From Ascidiella aspersa (Eukaryota), in contig OZ004608.1 of NCBI GenBank assembly GCA_963924565.1, positions 11,160,001 to 11,224,000 of the forward strand: DNA of 64,000 bases, given 5' to 3'. The translations under genes were made by a program, and so were the position numbers. The notes beneath the pieces were generated by a model. That model had not been told where the DNA came from and did not search any database. It was given only the letters and a program-made list of their open reading frames with translations. Positions 4,246 through 64,000 of the stretch are shown here, one piece after another (the stretch's first letter is position 1; every line of letters begins with the position of its first letter).

Positions 4246-4764
4246 AAGTCAAGAGATTGAAACAATAGATGACAGCGAAAAAAAAAATAAAAAAAATAAT
4301 CATAATAATACTGAAGCAGGTTGTACGAAAGCTGATGTTATTTAAAACAAAATATTGTTTATCAACAGTGCCAAAAGATTTTTAGCTTTTAAGACGAAAA
4401 ACACTGTTTTCAACTATAATGCCAAATAACGAATTGTTTGAGGTAATGCGCTCCATCAAAAGGAAAAAAACAAAACACACTAACTCGTCAACATGTTTTA
4501 ACAACATCACCCCCAGGATGATTATATCGCTTGCACTCTGTCTATGTCGCAACGATTGTGCAATATGATCGGTTTGGGCGCGTCATTTCGATTTTTTATT
4601 TATCTGGAGGTTGTAGCAACATATATGGAGACTCGTGGACTTGCTTCTCGGGCGTGATTTATTCGTGAACACGTGTAGAAAAGCCGCAGAGGGTCTGTAT
4701 TCATGTAAAGTTTGACGAAAATTACGGTTATTTATCGATGCAGGGGACTGCGGTTAGAGGGCGT

Positions 4765-5170
4765 TCCCCTGTTTGTCAGCAAAACTGTCGACGCCAGGAT
4801 TCCGATTTCTCAATAATATGGTGAAATAAAATAATTTCTTACAGCTGGCAATGCAGTCTATCTTCTGTTTGTCAACATTTATTAAGTAAAAAAACAATTT
4901 TTTTCCTATTGGCGAATATTCGAAATCTTTGAGCCTGTTGCTTGATATTTTCAGTAAATAGAATAAAATGAATTCCCTGTTTGTCAAAAGAACGGTCGAC
5001 GCCAGTATTCTGAATTTTGAATAATATGGTAAAATAAAATTAATGTCCTAAAGCTAACAAAGTATAGTCCAAGCCTCGTGAACTGTAAATATTTATGCAT
5101 TGTCCTTTTGTCACTATCTTCTGTTTGTCAACATTTATTAAACAAAACACAATATTTTTCGTATTGGGAA
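4765..5170. repeat. Local tandem duplication (~210-bp unit, 2 diverged copies)
   Basis: TTCCCTGTTTGTCA...GTCGACGCCAG...AATAATATGGT.AAATAAAAT and CTATCTTCTGTTTGTCAACATTTATTAA each occur twice in order. Confidence 0.75.
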
Positions 5171-5246
5171 ATCCTTAATTTTTTTTTAAATAAAAAAAAA
5201 TAAAAATATATATATATATTTCCCCTGTGCTTGCTATTTCCTAATC

Positions 5247-5583
5247 AACCCTTTAAACTGGGGTCCATGGACCCCTTTGGAGTACGTGAACTCGTTTTAA
5301 GGAACCCTGAAGCCTAATTAAAAGATTAGCGTATATTTTAAGAAGAAATCAACTTTTCAAAGAAAAGGCTTTAATTTAAAAAATAAAACATTTTTGCATT
5401 GAATCTATTCTGACTCAATTTTACTTTCACATTTTTTAGACCCAAAACAGAAGATTTTTAAAACTCATTTATAATGTGACGTTAATTTATGACGTAATCG
5501 CTAAAATTTTCTTCCCTAAAGTGGTCCATGCATCGCAAAAAAAGTCTTTAGGGGCCGCGGAAAAAAAAGTTTAAGAACCCCTG
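5247..5583. mobile_element. Degraded hAT-type MITE
   Basis: Left AAACTGGGGTCCATGGACCCC and right GGGGCCGCGG...GTTTAAGAACCCCTG ends typical of Charlie-like MITEs; left TIR decayed. Confidence 0.55.
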
Positions 5584-6185
5584 TACTAAACTAAATAGAA
5601 TAAATTATCGGAATAAAATCCATGTAAAAATCTTCATCGATATGCATTAAAACCATAAAACGACTTGTAGACTAATCGGTTTACACATTTATACTCACTC
5701 GACCCGCATCCTTTATTTGCTGACATGATGAACCTAAAGACCCCAAGCATCGATTCAAATTCGAATTAGTGGGCGTACGCATATATATTCATCATGGCGA
5801 AATTTACAGCCGTATGCAATTCCGTGATTGGTCGCCTAAAACCGCAATCGCTTGTGCACACTTTCTAGTTCCTTTACAAGCGCCATAACGACACTTTCCG
5901 CACACGTAAGGGGTGACGAACACGCCAGTTGCATTGCGAACATCATCGCGGACAAATAGGTCTTTTACTGTATCCAAGTTGTTCTTATCGTCAAAACAAG
6001 GCAAAGTACACCCAGACCAACTTGTTCAGCGCCAAGATATTTGCCAAATCATCTTTCCGACTTCCGGGCAAACATTTCTGCTATGTCGTGGCATTTTTTC
6101 ATTTGTATTTTGTTGACAAAGCAGTTTTCACAGTTTGCCTCAAATTAAAATATTTGCTTCGTTAGACCAAGTTGAAAGTCGGACT

Positions 6186-59760: not shown

Positions 59761-60326
59761 ACTTCTCGCTATAAACAGGAAACGAAATTATGCAAACAAT
59801 AAAATAATCAAATTTACATGTTTTAATCATCAACAAGAAAAACGAATGTTTGTCACGAAACGACCACAGATTTTATAGATAAGTTCAAATATTTTTAACA
59901 TTCCAATTATTTTTAAATAAATGGCATGTCATTATAAAAAAATTCAAAGCATGTTTAAATATAAAACATGAATTTTACAAATGATACTAAACAGAGTTGG
60001 CAATTCCCTCGAATATAAATAAATGTCAAACCTTCTGTATGCCATGGTTCAATAAGTTTCGACATGGTATCTGATTTTTAACTTTGGGTGACCAAATTGT
60101 TTGGCGGCAAATACAACCCATTGCAATTGTTATTGCTCTGTAACACTTGTTTAACTTCGAAAAGGATTCCTAACCTGTGTTGCTACCGACGACCACTGGA
60201 GCTGTCTGGAGGAGTGCATGCTTATTAATATTATAGGAAGAATTTACAAACACTTTGACCTCGAGACATTTTTTAGAGGTACTGTAAAATTAATAATTGA
60301 CTTGATTTAACTTGTTATATATCAGC

Positions 60327-61151
60327 CCAGGTTGGAAAGTTTGGCCTGCGCGGGGGATTTATCCAGCAGCACCTTCAGCCGCGGTCACAGCCGCGCATTT
60401 TAGAGAAAATGTGTTCAGCCGCGCAAACCTGACTCAAGCAAACGCGCAAAACTTCAGCCGCGCAAACTTCTGTATGGAACTAAATAACCTAAAAATAAGT
60501 AATACTACTAAAATATAAATACGGGCTTTAACAAACTTTACTATTTACGAGAAGTATATTAACGTAATAGAAACGTTAGTATGGCTCCTGTAATACTGAC
60601 GTCACATTTATTCCCTCATCACTCGTGTATGACCGAAAATGTGTCACCTTAAACCAGGCCTGCACAACTAAAATGGTACAAGGGCCACAACAAGCACAAA
60701 AAAAATTGGCGGGCCGCATACTGAAGTTGCATCACATTTTTAAACGCTAGTCTATAAGACGTATATAATGTAATGCATCATATAGAACCCCCTGCAAAAC
60801 ACTAAAAACGCACAGTTCGGCGTTTTGGTCACGCATCAGTGGACAACGGTCACGTGTTTAGTGACGTCAAATTAGGCAATATCGAGTAATATTGCATATC
60901 AAAAGCTACACTATCAAAGTTTTTAAATATTTAGCTGCGCCCGCACACCAACCAAAAATTGCTCAGTGCTTCAAGTATTCTATGAACGCTGTAAACCTGT
61001 AAGTTTATTATAATGTCGCAACTTACAACGTTCGGTAGCCTGGTGGTTTATTTTCAGCCGCGCAAGTTCAAGTCGAAATTTTATTTTCAGCCGCGCATTT
61101 TTTCAGCTGCAAAACATCTCCCCCGCGCAATATCCAAAGTTTCCAATCTGG
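60327..61151. mobile_element. MITE with ~30-bp imperfect TIRs and perfect 8-bp TSD, just upstream of the first coding exon of the BRC-repeat gene
   Basis: CCAGGTTGGAAAGTTTGG...GCGCGGGGGAT at the left end and its near reverse complement ending 61151; TSD ATATCAGC at 60319-60326 and 61152-61159; repeated subterminal CAGCCGCG; a second hAT-like left end (CAGGCCTGCACAAC) at ~60655. Confidence 0.85.
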
Positions 61152-61225
61152 ATATCAGCTATAAGTGCCTCATATTATGCAATAATGTTACCCTTTTAGT
61201 TAAAATAGCTGTACACTTGGCTGGA

Positions 61226-63772
61226 ATGGCCTGCGATACATCACTAGACTTGCAAGACGACATTGATGAAAATCTTATCAAAGAAATCCTAAACAATTCT
61301 GACATAGTGAAAGGTTAGTAAATTTAGATAAAAATCTTTAAAACAATTAACGACCTAATAACCACAAGAAGGCAACTGTAGTGACGATTATTAACTATTA
61401 TATTACCGTGTCTGGATAGTGTGGTGGAGACCCGTGCAAGGCTAATTAAAAAAAGACTGTTGTAAAAAACGCAAGTGCACTTGTCATACTTTCTACAGTG
61501 ATACATAACCACATTTGCATTAATTGTCATTAAAACATAACTTTGTATTTTAGCATTGGGACATACTGAGGTCATTGAAAACAGAATATGTTCACTACCT
61601 AAAGCTACACCAAAGACGCATAGTCCACCACAGGACTTTTCCATAACCCAGGCTCTTGAAAGGGAGAATTCGGATAAGAAAAAGTTTGTTTATCCTCATC
61701 AGATTAATATAAATTTGAAACTTGTAAGCAATTGTCTTGAAAATCAAGAAACTGAAAGTAATGAAGCAAACACTGTTAAAGTAAAACCTGTTCCACACTG
61801 TTACATCAATCAAAAGTCTTCTGAAAAATGTGAAAATCATGTTGGTCCGTCAAAGGATATAACAGATATAGATCTCTCTTGTAACAGCAACCCAATTTCT
61901 CAACCTACTTCACCTATTTTGTCTTCGCGTCGGAATCGAAAAAAGAGAAAACATACCACGTCTTCATGTGGTGCTGGAGATGATGTTTCTGTCAAACATA
62001 TAAGCACACTAACTGTAGGATGTCACAAAAATATCAATTTACCAAAACCTGTGCAAATAGTGTCAAATAAGGGTAATCTTCCAAATAGATGTTCATTTAA
62101 TGCAAATTCTATCCCTCACAGTGATGCCAAAACCAACTTAACTCCTTTATGTACATCAACTAGTAGTTTTCTTGAGAATGCAACACCAACAAAAACCAAA
62201 GCACAGCAAAGGCATTTCCAAAGCAAAACAAGTTTTACGCCATCTGGCACCGAGTACAATCCATGGAAAAAGCAAGAAAGTCTGAGTAAAAGAAGAAGAA
62301 CTTTCAGTGGTTCCTGTGTTAATGCTCAGACTGGAAACCTCCTGAAGTTGAAGCCTACGCCTGTCGTACTTAAAAATACAACAGAAGTAATGCAGACAAA
62401 TTTCACTCCAGGGGCAACAAAGCAAACAGAAACTGTGAGTTTCTTAGGAGGGAAATCATGCCAGGGCTTTAAGACTGCAAGTAACAAAGATGTTAAAATA
62501 TCCTCCGAGGCTTGGAATAAAGCTAAAGACTTGATGAAATGTCTCGATAAACCGCCAATGGCTTTGTCTCAAAGAGTGCCTAATACAAGTCCTATTAAAG
62601 TGTCTAAAGCTGCTTGGTTAAAGATTGAGTCACAAACACCTTGTAACATGAATGCCACTGCATCTAAAGGTAATTATGACACTGCATCTAAAGGTAATAA
62701 TGCTACAACAGTAAAAAAATTAAAAATGGCTCTATGTCAAGGCTTTAAGACTGCTAATAATAAGGATTTGAAAATATCCAATAATGCATGGAATAAAGCC
62801 ATACAATTTATGAACAATGTTGAAGGGCCCTCAATTGAACATCCTCAAAAGGTAGTTACGAGAAGTCCAATAACGATTTCAAAAGCCTCTTGGTCAAAGG
62901 CAGAAAGCACATTGCAGAGCAAGGATCAAACGCTTACAAACATTAAGCATTGCAATATACAAACAAAGAAACAGCCAATCGTGCAAAACACTTCTTGTGG
63001 ATTTCCGGAAATTTCGAACAACTGTGGATTTAGCACTGCAAGTAAAAAAGCCATAACTGTTTCCAAACAAGCGTGGACCAAAGCAATGCAGTTCATGGAA
63101 AATGAATCATCTGCTCTGTCACCAAATTGTGGTAACCTTGAGGGTAACTTGAATCATATTAGTAGTGGTGGTTGCAAGCCAATCACTATACCCAAAGAAG
63201 CATGGAATAAGGCAAAACATGTTATGTCAAGTTCAAGTTGCATGGAGAATAAAATGGAGAAAACTGACAATATTACCGGTAAATCAGTTGCGAAAAACGT
63301 TGAAAAAATATGTAAACTAGAGAGAAAAGTGATTCAACCTGTTGGTACTCTAAAATCTGTAAAACCAAATAGTTTTACGACTCCAAAATCTTTGCAAAAT
63401 TTGCCTGAAAACAGTTCGGATTCTGGATGCGGAATTCGAACTCCTTCTTCCACAGTAAGAACAACAGATGACTCTAACCTGCTTAGCCAAAAAGCTGTTT
63501 TAAGGAGTTTCCCGTCTGCGAAAAGACGCAACAGTGCCTACAAGCCACCAAGGAGTAAAAGGGATAAACTTCAAAACCATAGCAAAAAAACGGGGCCTGA
63601 TATTGCACAAACAGTTGATTCTGAAAAGGAGAATGTTGTACCGTCTTCTCAAAAATCACCTGCTTGCAGGTCGATTGGTAAACGCCTGGGCATCAAAACG
63701 AACCCGGAAACTCAGATTATGATGTCTGACGAAAGTTTGCTTTTGGCGTTGGAGCTAATTGAAAACACATGA
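61226..63772 (+). CDS. BRCA2: BRCA2-like BRC-repeat protein (~768 aa), apparently lacking the DNA-binding domain; coding exons 61226-61313 and 61554-63772
   Basis: ATG at 61226 (MACDTSLDLQDDIDENLIKEILNNSDIVK), donor AAG|gttagt, acceptor ttttag|CA; the phase-1 join (G+CA) runs in frame into the 738-aa ORF. Three BRC-consensus matches: GFKTASNKDVKISSEAWNKAKDLM (62465), GFKTANNKDLKISNNAWNKAIQFM (62741), GFSTASKKAITVSKQAWTKAMQFM (63026). Also a basic NLS-like RRNRKKRKH and a C-terminal AYKPPRS resembling BRCA2 AFQPPRS. The coding call is secure; orthology to BRCA2 is inference. Confidence 0.8.
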
Positions 63773-64000
63773 CGTCACATTGGCACAGTGATTTATTTTA
63801 TTCACTTAACCGCAGTGACACCCTGTTGTTGTTGTTGGGCGATTTTATAGTGTTTCTTACAGTACTATACGTATGAACGCGTGCTGATTACTCCTAGCGC
63901 TTTGTACTGATTTTGCAATTTAGCTTTTTCTTACCACTATTGTTCTATCCCACGCCACTTGCATGAATTGTTTTCGCGATTTTTCGTGTTTCACATTTTT

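What the first reader, a model, noticed from the sequence alone, without database searches (positions are those of the whole stretch)
61226..63772. BRCA2-like protein with BRC repeats but no DNA-binding domain: candidate minimal or split BRCA2
Seen: a 2-exon ~768-aa reading frame with three clear BRC-consensus repeats, ending at TGA 63770-63772 about 180 aa after the last (degenerate) repeat, with no helical, OB-fold or tower domain and no WFEEL-type PALB2 motif. Known: BRC repeats (F.TASGK.V.VS...L.KA..LF) bind RAD51; most BRCA2 proteins pair them with a DSS1-binding helical/OB domain, and Drosophila BRCA2 is the well-known exception. Inference: this is an independent DBD loss, one half of a split BRCA2 whose OB domains sit in another gene, or a stand-alone BRC-only RAD51 modulator.
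Basis: partly seen in the sequence, partly recalled or inferred. Interest (0 to 1): 0.8.

Follow-up and report, generated by a model that had tools for sequence, protein, structure and literature searches.

The report
Sea-squirt BRCA2 without DNA-binding domain
This is an expressed sea-squirt version of the DNA-repair gene BRCA2 that keeps the parts that hold RAD51 but has lost the large DNA-binding domain. That makes tunicates, the closest relatives of vertebrates, a third lineage (after Drosophila and mosses) with a 'minimal' BRCA2.

Summary
A two-exon gene (ATG 61226, intron 61314-61553, TGA 63770-63772; 768 codons) carries three Pfam-significant BRC repeats. RNA contigs show exactly this intron and run unspliced through the stop.

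Eight related proteins end on the same last residues, with only BRC repeats in Pfam. The two that are named come from the ascidians Ciona intestinalis and Phallusia mammillata. The stop is therefore ancestral, not an annotation artefact.

It is a true BRCA2 ortholog:
- The Phallusia protein starts with the fish BRCA2 N-terminal LGPL.PNWF..L motif (E 1e-6).
- The tunicate tail has two invariant blocks, Y-x-P-P-R and S-D-E-x-L..A. They match, in order, the only two invariant blocks of vertebrate BRCA2 tails, F-x-P-P-R (the TR2 P-motif) and D-E-E-L-A. This is motif-level only; profile comparison is not significant.

No helical, OB1, OB2, OB3 or Tower match was found in the protein, in the 30 kb downstream or in the 308-Mb genome. 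The one near-threshold OB3 hit is the antisense frame of a GPCR exon. This species also lacks the WF motif, and PALB2 and RAD52 were not detected.

Verdict: a lineage-wide loss of the DNA-binding domain, a new member of the known 'noncanonical BRCA2' class. The split-gene and splice-out readings are rejected. No function was tested.

The parts
61226..61313 (+). Exon 1 coding part (MACDTSLDLQDDIDENLIKEILNNSDIVK plus the first base of the next codon). The start codon is conserved with the Phallusia ortholog.
   Evidence: Sequence. BLASTP against P0010 residues 1-27: 14/29 identical, E 3e-5. Contig 4 of run X1 covers it.
61314..61553 (+). Intron, 240 nt, GT..AG, phase 1
   Evidence: Spliced contig of run X1: joint L009 1011->1252 with 'cut +2'. 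Donor and acceptor were read.
61554..63772 (+). Exon 2 coding part, including the stop TGA at 63770-63772. It is a basic protein (pI 9.7) that is predicted to be mostly disordered.
   Evidence: Continuous RNA contigs and stranded reads with no internal joint. AF2 mean pLDDT 42.9, 595 of 738 residues below 50. pI.
61637..61705 (+). Conserved N-part motifs FSITQAL and KF.YP.QI, shared with Phallusia. Function unknown.
   Evidence: BLASTP against P0010, E 1e-10. Alignment A2.
61907..61954 (+). TSPIL followed by the basic cluster RRNRKKRKH. Inferred to be a nuclear localisation signal next to an S-P site; conserved in P0001.
   Evidence: The function is inferred.
62252..62314 (+). E-Y-N-P-W-K-K motif and the KRRR cluster. 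Conserved in Phallusia, P0001 and, partly, Ciona. Function unknown.
62459..62536 (+). BRC repeat 1 (CQGFKTASNKDVKISSEAWNKAKDLM): an FxxA module followed by a helix
   Evidence: Pfam PF00634, best stretch 301-326. Genome scan 31.3 bits. PDB 1n0w BRC4 aligns. AF2 pLDDT 66-81.
62588..62632 (+). Half-unit 1' (SPIKVSKAAWLKIES): the strand-plus-helix half of a BRC repeat, without FxxA
   Evidence: Pattern scan.
62735..62812 (+). BRC repeat 2 (CQGFKTANNKDLKISNNAWNKAIQFM)
   Evidence: Pfam. Genome scan 19.7 bits. PDB 8c3n BRCA2 peptide aligns. AF2 pLDDT 78-81.
62864..62908 (+). Half-unit 2' (SPITISKASWSKAES), without FxxA. The Phallusia ortholog has an equivalent unit after its BRC repeat (GVTVPKDAWNRACKVI).
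63023..63097 (+). BRC repeat 3 (CGFSTASKKAITVSKQAWTKAMQFM). It is the only repeat column set invariant across all 8 orthologs (F492, A495, S503).
   Evidence: Pfam. Genome scan 22 bits. Alignment A2 invariants. AF2 pLDDT 73-88.
63176..63226 (+).
   Evidence: AF2 helix 547-568, pLDDT 70-75.
63521..63562 (+). P-motif of the TR2 (exon 27) type: KRRNSAYKPPRSKR. N, S, Y, P, P and R are invariant in all tunicate-type proteins.
   Evidence: Alignments A1 and A2. Vertebrate tails have AFQPPRS / TFNPPRRS, insects SFRPPLRK / NS(Y/F)KSPL. Literature on FxPP: PMC11436757 and PMC11229353. Profile comparison is not significant.
63680..63769 (+). Terminal conserved motif KRLGIK...QIMMSDESLLLALELIENT, a predicted helix. 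Every ortholog ends here.
   Evidence: A1 invariants L, G, E, Q, I, S, D, E, L, A, E. AF2 helix 717-737, pLDDT 85-88. It resembles the vertebrate tail block V.DEELA (top hhalign hit, E 0.18) and the helix half of BRC repeats.
63773..64000 (+). 3' UTR. It continues beyond the window to about window-equivalent 64520.
   Evidence: Contigs of X1 run to L009 4223. X4 coverage on the gene's strand falls after L009 3600.

Best explanation
This is the BRCA2 ortholog of an ascidian-type tunicate. In this lineage the whole helical/OB1/OB2-Tower/OB3 DNA-binding domain has been deleted from inside the gene, and with it the DSS1-binding surface. What remains is a 768-residue basic protein that is mostly disordered and is built from short linear motifs.

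Inferred mechanism:
- The three BRC repeats (an FxxA module plus a helix) bind RAD51 monomers at the oligomerisation interface and deliver them.
- The conserved Y-x-P-P-R P-motif near the C-terminus binds across RAD51 protomers and stabilises the filament, as the exon-27/TR2 motif does in vertebrates.
- Basic clusters give nuclear import.
- The basic disordered regions may supply whatever ssDNA contact is needed, as shown for moss BRCA2.
- In this species recruitment is also independent of PALB2. The W-F motif is gone and no PALB2 WD40 domain is detectable.

Shown here: the gene structure, its expression, the BRC repeats, the conserved stop, the absence of any detectable DBD in the genome, and the motif matches to BRCA2 termini.

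Inferred only: RAD51 binding, filament stabilisation, DNA binding, and independence from DSS1 and PALB2.
For: Gene and transcript:
- ORF and splice sites.
- A spliced contig of run X1 and unspliced coverage through the stop.

BRC repeats:
- Pfam E 5e-15.
- They are the three best BRC hits in the genome; the only others are three isolated sub-threshold single matches of 16-19 bits.

Conserved stop and architecture:
- Seven full-length relatives match to their last residue and carry only BRC repeats in Pfam; two are named (P0010 Phallusia mammillata, P0003 Ciona intestinalis), five are unnamed (P0001, P0023, P0037, P0041, P0053). The fragment P0025 shows the same tail motif.

Orthology to BRCA2:
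- Phallusia residues 23-44 match fish BRCA2 N-termini, E 1e-6 and 6e-6.
- Window exon 1 matches Phallusia residues 1-27, E 3e-5.
- The tail blocks Y-x-P-P-R and S-D-E-x-L..A are collinear with the only invariant blocks of vertebrate tails, F-x-P-P-R and D-E-E-L-A.

No DBD:
- OB1, helical and OB2 give nothing at E<=10. Tower gives E 2.4. OB3 gives one sub-threshold hit.
- Leafhopper and bovid DBD proteins used as queries find nothing.
- An 87-sequence DBD profile finds nothing in the window or the 30 kb downstream.
- The same scan does find DSS1 and intron-split RAD51 paralogs in this genome.

No folded domain in the AF2 model.

Precedent for function without a DBD: moss and Drosophila (PMC12412785).
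Against: - Absence of the DBD rests on six-frame profile scans that had no eukaryotic positive control for these families. A very divergent or finely split DBD could be missed.
- The P-motif has Tyr where the literature calls Phe invariant.
- Profile-profile comparison of the tails is not significant (E 0.18 and 0.5).
- The PDB sequence searches with the tail found nothing.
- The W-F motif that ties the family to BRCA2 is in Phallusia, not in this protein.
- The five unnamed relatives have no taxon label, so 'tunicate-wide' is shown only for ascidian-type sequences.
- RNA depth was low (1-10x, 6% of run X4 read), so rare isoforms are not excluded.
- No binding or genetic data exist.
Confidence: 0.8

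Rival explanations
1. Split BRCA2. The BRC half is encoded here, and the helical/OB half is a separate gene elsewhere in the genome. The two work together.
For: One OB3-like hit lies at G000:C5:22053208-22053399(+). It scores 21.3 bits in the genome scan and 23.5 bits as an isolated piece, against a cut-off of 24. Its best local match is the C-terminal end of OB3 in a leafhopper BRCA2. DSS1 is present in the genome.
Against: - The hit is the antisense frame of the last coding exon of a secretin/adhesion-type GPCR on the minus strand. That exon follows a 7tm_2 TM6-7 exon about 1 kb upstream and a splice acceptor.
- Its 3' end overlaps a high-copy 60-bp repeat.
- No other DBD piece lies within 40 kb.
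- The genome-wide E is 0.036, and five families were tried.
- OB1 and the helical domain are the best conserved parts, detectable even in protists, yet they give nothing.
- The tail that follows the DBD in canonical BRCA2 is attached to the BRC half here.
- DSS1 is also a proteasome subunit (general knowledge), so its presence says nothing.
Confidence: 0.04
2. The DNA-binding domain exists, here or elsewhere, but has diverged beyond recognition. Alternatively it is replaced by an unrelated DNA-binding fold in a partner protein.
For: Tunicate proteins evolve fast: the orthologs are only 23-30% identical. The DBD scans had no eukaryotic positive control.
Against: The protein itself has no room for one. 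AF2 finds no folded domain, and the confident segments are just the BRC units and the terminal helix. The transcript ends about 750 nt after the stop. DBD domains remain detectable from plants to protists.
Confidence: 0.08
3. A stand-alone BRC-repeat protein that is not the BRCA2 ortholog, for example a RAD51 regulator that picked up BRC repeats. True BRCA2 would then have been lost.
For: Named databases call the Ciona and Phallusia proteins 'uncharacterized'. Only short motifs link the protein to BRCA2.
Against: - Three motif classes occur in the BRCA2 order: the N-terminal LGPL.PNWF..L (Phallusia, E 1e-6 against fish BRCA2 at the same position), the BRC array, and the [FY]-x-P-P-R plus acidic-hydrophobic end.
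- All significant database hits are BRCA2 proteins.
- There is no second BRC locus in the genome.
Confidence: 0.04
4. The gene model is incomplete. Some transcripts splice from inside exon 2, or from an upstream exon, to further coding exons, so the 768-residue product is not the main protein.
For: RNA depth is low. The 5' end of the transcript abuts a high-copy repeat, so its start is not mapped.
Against: There is no joint inside exon 2 in either RNA data set, and RNA coverage is zero from L009 4400 to 5600. The start Met-Ala-Cys and the last residues are both conserved with orthologs from other species.
Confidence: 0.03

Closest known systems
Noncanonical BRCA2 of Drosophila (for example D. 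elegans XP_017125143, P0064)
   Same: BRC repeats, about 1000 residues or fewer, and no helical/OB/Tower domain. This genome also shows no detectable PALB2 or RAD52, which from my own knowledge of the fly is also the case there. The fly protein supports RAD51-dependent mitotic and meiotic repair (PMC12412785).
   Different: The loss is independent. Mosquitoes and lower Diptera still have the DBD, and tunicates are deuterostomes. The tunicate protein keeps a TR2-type Y-x-P-P-R motif and a conserved terminal helix. In Phallusia it also keeps the N-terminal W-F motif.
Moss noncanonical BRCA2 (Physcomitrium patens PpBRCA2; PMC12412785)
   Same: BRC repeats without a canonical DBD, and a disordered protein. 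In moss, ssDNA binding is provided by a disordered N-terminal region. That region is the model for what the basic, disordered N-part (pI 9.5) could do here.
   Different: It is a plant lineage, and there is no sequence similarity outside the BRC repeats. DNA binding was not tested here.
Canonical vertebrate BRCA2 (fish and non-human mammals, P0130, P0148, P0156 and others)
   Same: - BRC repeats.
- The exon-27 P-motif F-x-P-P-R, followed 35-50 residues later by V.DEELA. Here it is Y-K-P-P-R followed 62 residues later by MSDESLL.
- The N-terminal LGPL.PNWF..L motif, present in the Phallusia ortholog.
   Different: - Vertebrate BRCA2 has 2800-3450 residues, 8 BRC repeats, a roughly 700-residue DBD with a DSS1 site, and an exon-14 PhePP motif VFVPPF. 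None of these is present here.
- Tyr replaces the Phe of the P-motif.
- The helix of each BRC unit carries a Trp (S.AW.KA).
- Each BRC repeat is followed by a half-unit without FxxA.
Ciona intestinalis LOC100185089 (XP_018668532) and Phallusia mammillata CAB3262912, both annotated 'uncharacterized protein'
   Same: They are direct orthologs with the same architecture: BRC repeats, N-S-x-Y-K-P-P-R, and ...SDESLL.A..L.E at the end.
   Different: They are 24-30% identical and differ in the number of BRC units. Phallusia keeps the W-F motif that this species has lost.

Membership tests
BRCA2 (canonical, as in vertebrates, most insects and plants) | One or more BRC repeats (Pfam PF00634) with an FxxA module | tested here: met
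   E 5e-15, three stretches: FKTA, FKTA and FSTA.
BRCA2 (canonical, as in vertebrates, most insects and plants) | Helical domain plus OB1, OB2/Tower and OB3 (PF09169, PF09103, PF21318, PF09121, PF09104) | tested here: not met
   None in the protein, none in the eight relatives scanned and none in the genome. The single OB3-like hit is the antisense frame of a GPCR exon. AF2 shows no folded domain.
BRCA2 (canonical, as in vertebrates, most insects and plants) | DSS1 binding through the helical/OB1/OB2 surface | not testable with these tools
   The surface is absent. DSS1 itself is encoded in the genome.
BRCA2 (canonical, as in vertebrates, most insects and plants) | N-terminal PALB2-binding motif (LGP...NWF..L) | tested here: not met
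   It is absent from this protein, which reads ALGHTEVIENRI at the homologous place. It is present in the Phallusia ortholog, E 1e-6 against fish BRCA2. PALB2 WD40 was not found in this genome.
BRCA2 (canonical, as in vertebrates, most insects and plants) | C-terminal RAD51-filament-binding P-motif (FxPP, TR2/exon 27) | tested here: inconclusive
   Y-K-P-P-R is invariant in the tunicate-type proteins and lies C-terminal to the BRC array. It matches the vertebrate F-x-P-P-R, but Tyr stands for the 'invariant' Phe. Profile comparison is not significant. Binding was not tested.
Noncanonical BRCA2 (class proposed in PMC12412785: Drosophila, mosses) | A BRCA2 ortholog with BRC repeats that lacks the canonical DBD | tested here: met
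   Orthology from the N- and C-terminal motifs plus the BRC array. No DBD found.
Noncanonical BRCA2 (class proposed in PMC12412785: Drosophila, mosses) | Binds RAD51 and is needed for RAD51 foci and homologous recombination | not testable with these tools
   RAD51 is encoded at G000:C6:9074080-9074814 (387 bits). There are no interaction or genetic data.
Noncanonical BRCA2 (class proposed in PMC12412785: Drosophila, mosses) | ssDNA binding by a disordered region outside the BRC repeats | not testable with these tools
   The N-part is basic (pI 9.5) and predicted disordered. This is suggestive only.

The most novel reading that the evidence does not exclude
Ascidian-type tunicates, and perhaps all tunicates, run homologous recombination with a roughly 400-900-residue BRCA2 made only of short motifs: the PALB2 motif (sometimes present), BRC repeats, BRC half-units without FxxA, a Y-x-P-P-R P-motif and a terminal helix. 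There is no OB/helical domain and no DSS1 interface. In this species PALB2 and RAD52 were also not detected.

This would be a natural 'mini-BRCA2' in the sister group of vertebrates. Ciona would then be a genetically tractable chordate in which to ask what the DNA-binding domain is for and what replaces it. One candidate replacement is the set of half-units and the terminal BRC-like helix, acting as extra contacts with the RAD51 filament.
Probability: 0.55. Interest if true: 0.7.

Novelty: new member of a known kind. Interest (0 to 1): 0.58.

Why it matters
BRCA2's DNA-binding domain carries most of the known pathogenic missense variants (PMC12412785). Yet a 2025 study still lists only Drosophila and mosses as organisms whose BRCA2 lacks it.

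A third, independent loss in tunicates, the closest living relatives of vertebrates, would have three consequences:
- It shows that the domain is dispensable even within chordates.
- It gives names to proteins now annotated as 'uncharacterized' in Ciona and Phallusia. It may also explain why a BRCA2/FANCD1 homolog was hard to find in Ciona. That point rests on my recollection of Stanley et al. 2016, which is not in the library.
- It offers a natural minimal chordate BRCA2 (BRC repeats, P-motif and terminal helix) for structure-function work and for genetics in Ciona.

The conserved Tyr in the P-motif and the BRC half-units without FxxA are concrete features that can be tested.

Tried and rejected
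- **OB3-like hit on C5**. I followed it with a repeat search, local phmmer and HMM searches over 40 kb and a reading of the opposite strand. Rejected: it is the antisense frame of a GPCR exon.
- **Tower-like hit on C6** (E 2.4) and small hits in L007 downstream. The profile positions were inconsistent between searches, so these are noise.
- **PDB sequence searches.** The C-terminal tail, as a single sequence and as a profile, found nothing. The Phallusia N-terminus gave one hit at E 1.7 to an unrelated bacterial protein and none to BRCA2. The BRC region gave only weak BRC4-type peptide hits.
- **hhalign** of the tunicate tail profile against lepidopteran and vertebrate tail profiles. The top hits fall on the expected motifs, but E is 0.5 and 0.18, which is not significant.
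- **My first idea that the terminal motif is specific to the vertebrate tail.** It also resembles the helix half of ordinary BRC repeats, so its origin stays open.
The taxa and gene neighbourhoods of the five unnamed relatives could not be checked.
- **Stanley et al. 2016** (Ciona Fanconi genes, PMC4898443) is not held.
- **Literature searches** for BRCA2 with tunicate, Ciona or ascidian found no description of this protein.
- The exons were searched separately.
- **A complex model with RAD51** could not be made. The structure tool folds single chains only, and a fused construct would be a changed sequence.
Full report
**1. What is there**

The window is G000:C2:11160001-11224000 of a 308-Mb eukaryotic assembly in 75 contigs.

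Gene structure:
- On the + strand an open frame runs from 61556 to the TGA at 63770-63772 (738 aa).
- An ATG at 61226 opens a short exon that ends at 61313 (AAAG|GTTAGT).
- The acceptor ttttag|CA puts the start of exon 2 at 61554, in phase 1.

BRC repeats:
- Pfam finds the BRCA2 repeat (PF00634) at E 5e-15 with three stretches, and nothing else of note.
- In a six-frame scan of the whole genome the three repeats are the three best BRC hits. Only three isolated sub-threshold single matches (16-19 bits) appear elsewhere.
- The repeats read CQGFKTASNKDVKISSEAWNKAKDLM, CQGFKTANNKDLKISNNAWNKAIQFM and CGFSTASKKAITVSKQAWTKAMQFM.
- Each is followed, 17-26 residues later, by a half-unit that keeps the strand-plus-helix part but has no FxxA: SPIKVSKAAWLKIES, SPITISKASWSKAES and KPITIPKEAWNKAKHVM.
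- The Phallusia ortholog has the same pairing of a BRC repeat with a half-unit.

**2. Transcript evidence**

I laid four runs on L009 (window 60301-66300).
- Runs X2 and X3 behave as DNA, with flat depth throughout.
- Run X1 is recorded as kind '?'. It behaves as RNA. One contig joins L009 1011 to 1252 (GT..AG, cut +2), which removes exactly 61314-61553. Further contigs run without a gap to L009 4223, and depth is zero from 4400 to 5600.
- The stranded RNA-seq run X4 covers exon 2 at 1-10x on the gene's strand and shows no joint inside it.
- A 1628-nt contig of X1 passes the proposed weak donors (63670, 63679) and the stop codon without a mismatch.

So the mRNA reads through to the TGA and ends about 750 nt later. 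Only 6% of X4 was read, so rare isoforms cannot be excluded. The 5' end abuts a high-copy repeat and is not mapped.

**3. Relatives, and the conserved stop**

- The word search and the exhaustive representative search found 67 proteins.
- Seven short ones (415-874 aa) match the query through to their own last residue. P0010 is Phallusia mammillata CAB3262912 and P0003 is Ciona intestinalis XP_018668532; both are annotated 'uncharacterized protein LOC100185089'. The other five are unnamed.
- An eighth, the fragment P0025, has the same tail motif.
- Pfam sees only BRC repeats in all eight.
- The C-terminal alignment A1 has two invariant blocks: N-S-x-Y-[KR]-P-P-R, and L-G...E.QI..SDE.L..A...E followed by the end of the protein.
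- Window exon 1 aligns with Phallusia residues 1-27, starting at Met-Ala-Cys (E 3e-5).

Both ends of the reading frame are therefore ancestral in this lineage. The named members place the genome among ascidian-type tunicates.

**4. Is it BRCA2?**

All other significant hits are BRCA2 proteins of insects, protists and Drosophila. A second word search brought in vertebrate, mollusc and crustacean BRCA2. Three lines tie the tunicate family to BRCA2.

- *N-terminus.* Phallusia residues 23-44 (EELMKALGPLNPNWFDDLNEQV) match the extreme N-terminus of fish BRCA2 (DEIWKELGPLDPNWFDILTAQT and EIKRELGPLTPNWFEEL) at E 1e-6 and 6e-6.
- *BRC array.* It lies in the middle of the protein, as in BRCA2.
- *Tail.* In an alignment of vertebrate tails (A4) the only invariant blocks are F-x-P-P-R and D-E-E-L-A. 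These are the exon-27/TR2 P-motif (F3298, P3300, P3301 in PMC11436757; PMC11229353) and a block that follows it. In tunicates the only invariant blocks are Y-x-P-P-R and S-D-E-x-L..A, in the same order and at a similar distance from the end. The -P-P-R ending is of the exon-27 type, not the exon-14 type (VFVPPF). Canonical insect BRCA2 has SFRPPLRK or NS(Y/F)KSPL after OB3, so Tyr at this position is not unique.

Caveats on the tail:
- hhalign puts its top hit on exactly these motifs, but at E 0.18 (vertebrates) and 0.5 (Lepidoptera), which is not significant.
- The PDB sequence searches with the tail are blank.
- The terminal block also resembles the helix half of ordinary BRC repeats.
- The tail homology is therefore motif-level only. 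The N-terminal match is statistically sound, but it sits in the Phallusia ortholog.

In this species the W-F core is missing: the protein reads ALGHTEVIENRI where Phallusia has ALGPLNPNWFDDL.

**5. Is there a DNA-binding domain anywhere?**

- *In the protein:* none by Pfam. AlphaFold2 on the 8-sequence alignment gives mean pLDDT 42.9 with 595 of 738 residues below 50. The confident segments are only the three BRC units, the last half-unit and the terminal helix.
- *Downstream:* the 30 kb after the window (L007, L010, L008) hold nothing for a lepidopteran DBD profile, a leafhopper DBD or an 87-sequence DBD profile of animals and a plant.
- *Genome-wide:* OB1, helical and OB2 give no match at E<=10. 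Tower gives E 2.4. OB3 gives one hit at 21.3 bits. Leafhopper and bovid DBD proteins used as queries find nothing.
- *Controls:* these searches had no eukaryotic positive control for the DBD families. The same scan does find DSS1 (74.5 bits) and an intron-split RAD51 paralog, exon by exon, down to 35-residue pieces.

The OB3-like piece (C5:22053208-22053399) scores 23.5 bits in isolation against a cut-off of 24, so I followed it up.
- It is the antisense frame of the last coding exon of a secretin/adhesion-type GPCR. The 7tm_2 TM6-7 exon lies about 1 kb upstream on the minus strand. A splice acceptor follows, and then GVLIFYVAAVMRKEIFEMW... runs to a stop.
- Its 3' end lies in a high-copy 60-bp repeat.
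- No other DBD piece lies within 40 kb.

I regard this hit as chance.

**6. Context**

PALB2 WD40 (E<=1) and RAD52 (E<=0.01) were not found in the genome, with the same caveat about missing controls. RAD51 is present as an intronless 349-codon frame on C6, together with several paralogs.

**7. How it most likely works (inferred)**

- The protein is a basic (pI 9.7), disordered scaffold.
- The BRC repeats bind RAD51 monomers.
- The Y-x-P-P-R motif binds and stabilises RAD51 filaments, as the P-motifs do in vertebrates.
- The basic clusters (RRNRKKRKH, KRRR) give nuclear import.
- The disordered basic parts may contact ssDNA, as in moss BRCA2.
- The invariant R-R-N-S just before the Tyr looks like a site for a basophilic kinase and might regulate the motif. 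This is speculation.
- The half-units without FxxA and the BRC-like terminal helix could give extra RAD51 contacts that do not cap the oligomerisation pocket. This too is speculation.

**8. Comparison and novelty**

A 2025 paper states that only Drosophila and mosses are known to have BRCA2 without the canonical DBD, and it proposes a 'noncanonical BRCA2' class (PMC12412785). My searches of the library found no description of a tunicate BRCA2. A paper on Fanconi genes in Ciona (Stanley et al. 2016) is cited but is not held. From memory, unverified, it judged the evidence for a BRCA2/FANCD1 homolog in Ciona to be weak.

The finding is therefore a new member of a known kind: a third, independent loss of the DBD, in the sister group of vertebrates. 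Mosquitoes and lower Diptera keep the DBD, so the Drosophila loss is a separate event.

**9. Earlier notes of the scan**

Two first-reader notes cover the same stretch. One concerns a BRC array with no room for a DBD. The other says that SAYKPPRS resembles TR2/FxPP. Both agree with what I found. I had already written the TR2 idea in my notebook, and I tested it with sequences obtained from the tools.

**10. Limits**

- No complex modelling was possible.
- No runs of N were met in the stretches I read, and none were filled.
- Non-human vertebrate BRCA2 proteins returned by the search tool were used only for motif comparison.

Noticed in passing
window 60301-61151 (L009 1-851) and L009 5760-6000 (about 66060-66300 in window coordinates, beyond the window's end): High-copy repeats flank the gene on both sides. 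Summed word depth reaches 10^4-10^5 in the DNA runs, against about 55-100 over the gene, and many contigs diverge at L009 851 and 5760-5810. The upstream repeat hides the 5' end of the transcript.
   Followed up: no
L011 1665-1730 (G000:C5:22053372-22053437), with many other copies such as C2:33821305-33821770 and C6:25938006-25938399: A repeat of about 60 bp, 88-97% identical, has at least 60 copies on all large contigs and forms tandem arrays at some loci. It could be a MITE or a satellite.
   Followed up: partly
L011 1399-1659 (-) and 2658-2858 (-) (G000:C5, about 22053106-22054565): These are the last two coding exons of a secretin/adhesion-type GPCR (7tm_2 positions 193-246, E 8e-4). The antisense frame of the final exon mimics the C-terminal end of BRCA2 OB3 at 23.5 bits. 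It shows how a near-threshold Pfam hit can arise on the wrong strand.
   Followed up: yes
G000:C6:9074080-9074814 (L019) and G000:C8:22213323-22215460: The best RAD51 match (387 bits) lies in a single uninterrupted frame of 349 codons, so it looks intronless. A second close RAD51/DMC1-type gene on C8 is split into at least four exons.
   Followed up: no
G000:C3:30404694-30404861 (L017) and C3:30770826-30770981 (L018): There are two DSS1/SEM1 matches 366 kb apart. The second has an in-frame TGA and a lower score (49 against 74.5 bits), so it may be a pseudogene or an intron-split copy.
   Followed up: no
whole genome G000: No match to the PALB2 WD40 domain (PF16756, E<=1) and none to RAD52 (PF04098, E<=0.01). 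If real, this species lacks both the BRCA2 recruiter and the alternative RAD51 mediator. There was no eukaryotic positive control.
   Followed up: partly
window 61907-61954, and lepidopteran BRCA2 (for example P0030 residues 1436-1472): Lepidopteran BRCA2 has a conserved KRSGSPILSCPKAKRRKKFETPY just before its DBD. It resembles both this protein's TSPILSSRRNRKKRKH and the flank of the tunicate P-motif (SP.F...AKRRNS.YKPPR). It may be an old S-P plus basic plus F/Y-x-x-P module.
   Followed up: partly
window 61160-61200: Two tiny out-of-frame upstream ORFs (ATGCAATAA and ATGTTACCCTTTTAG) lie upstream of the start codon. An acceptor-like ccttttag|TT sits at 61199, about 27 nt before the ATG. It might be a trans-splice acceptor, which is common in tunicates.
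   Followed up: no
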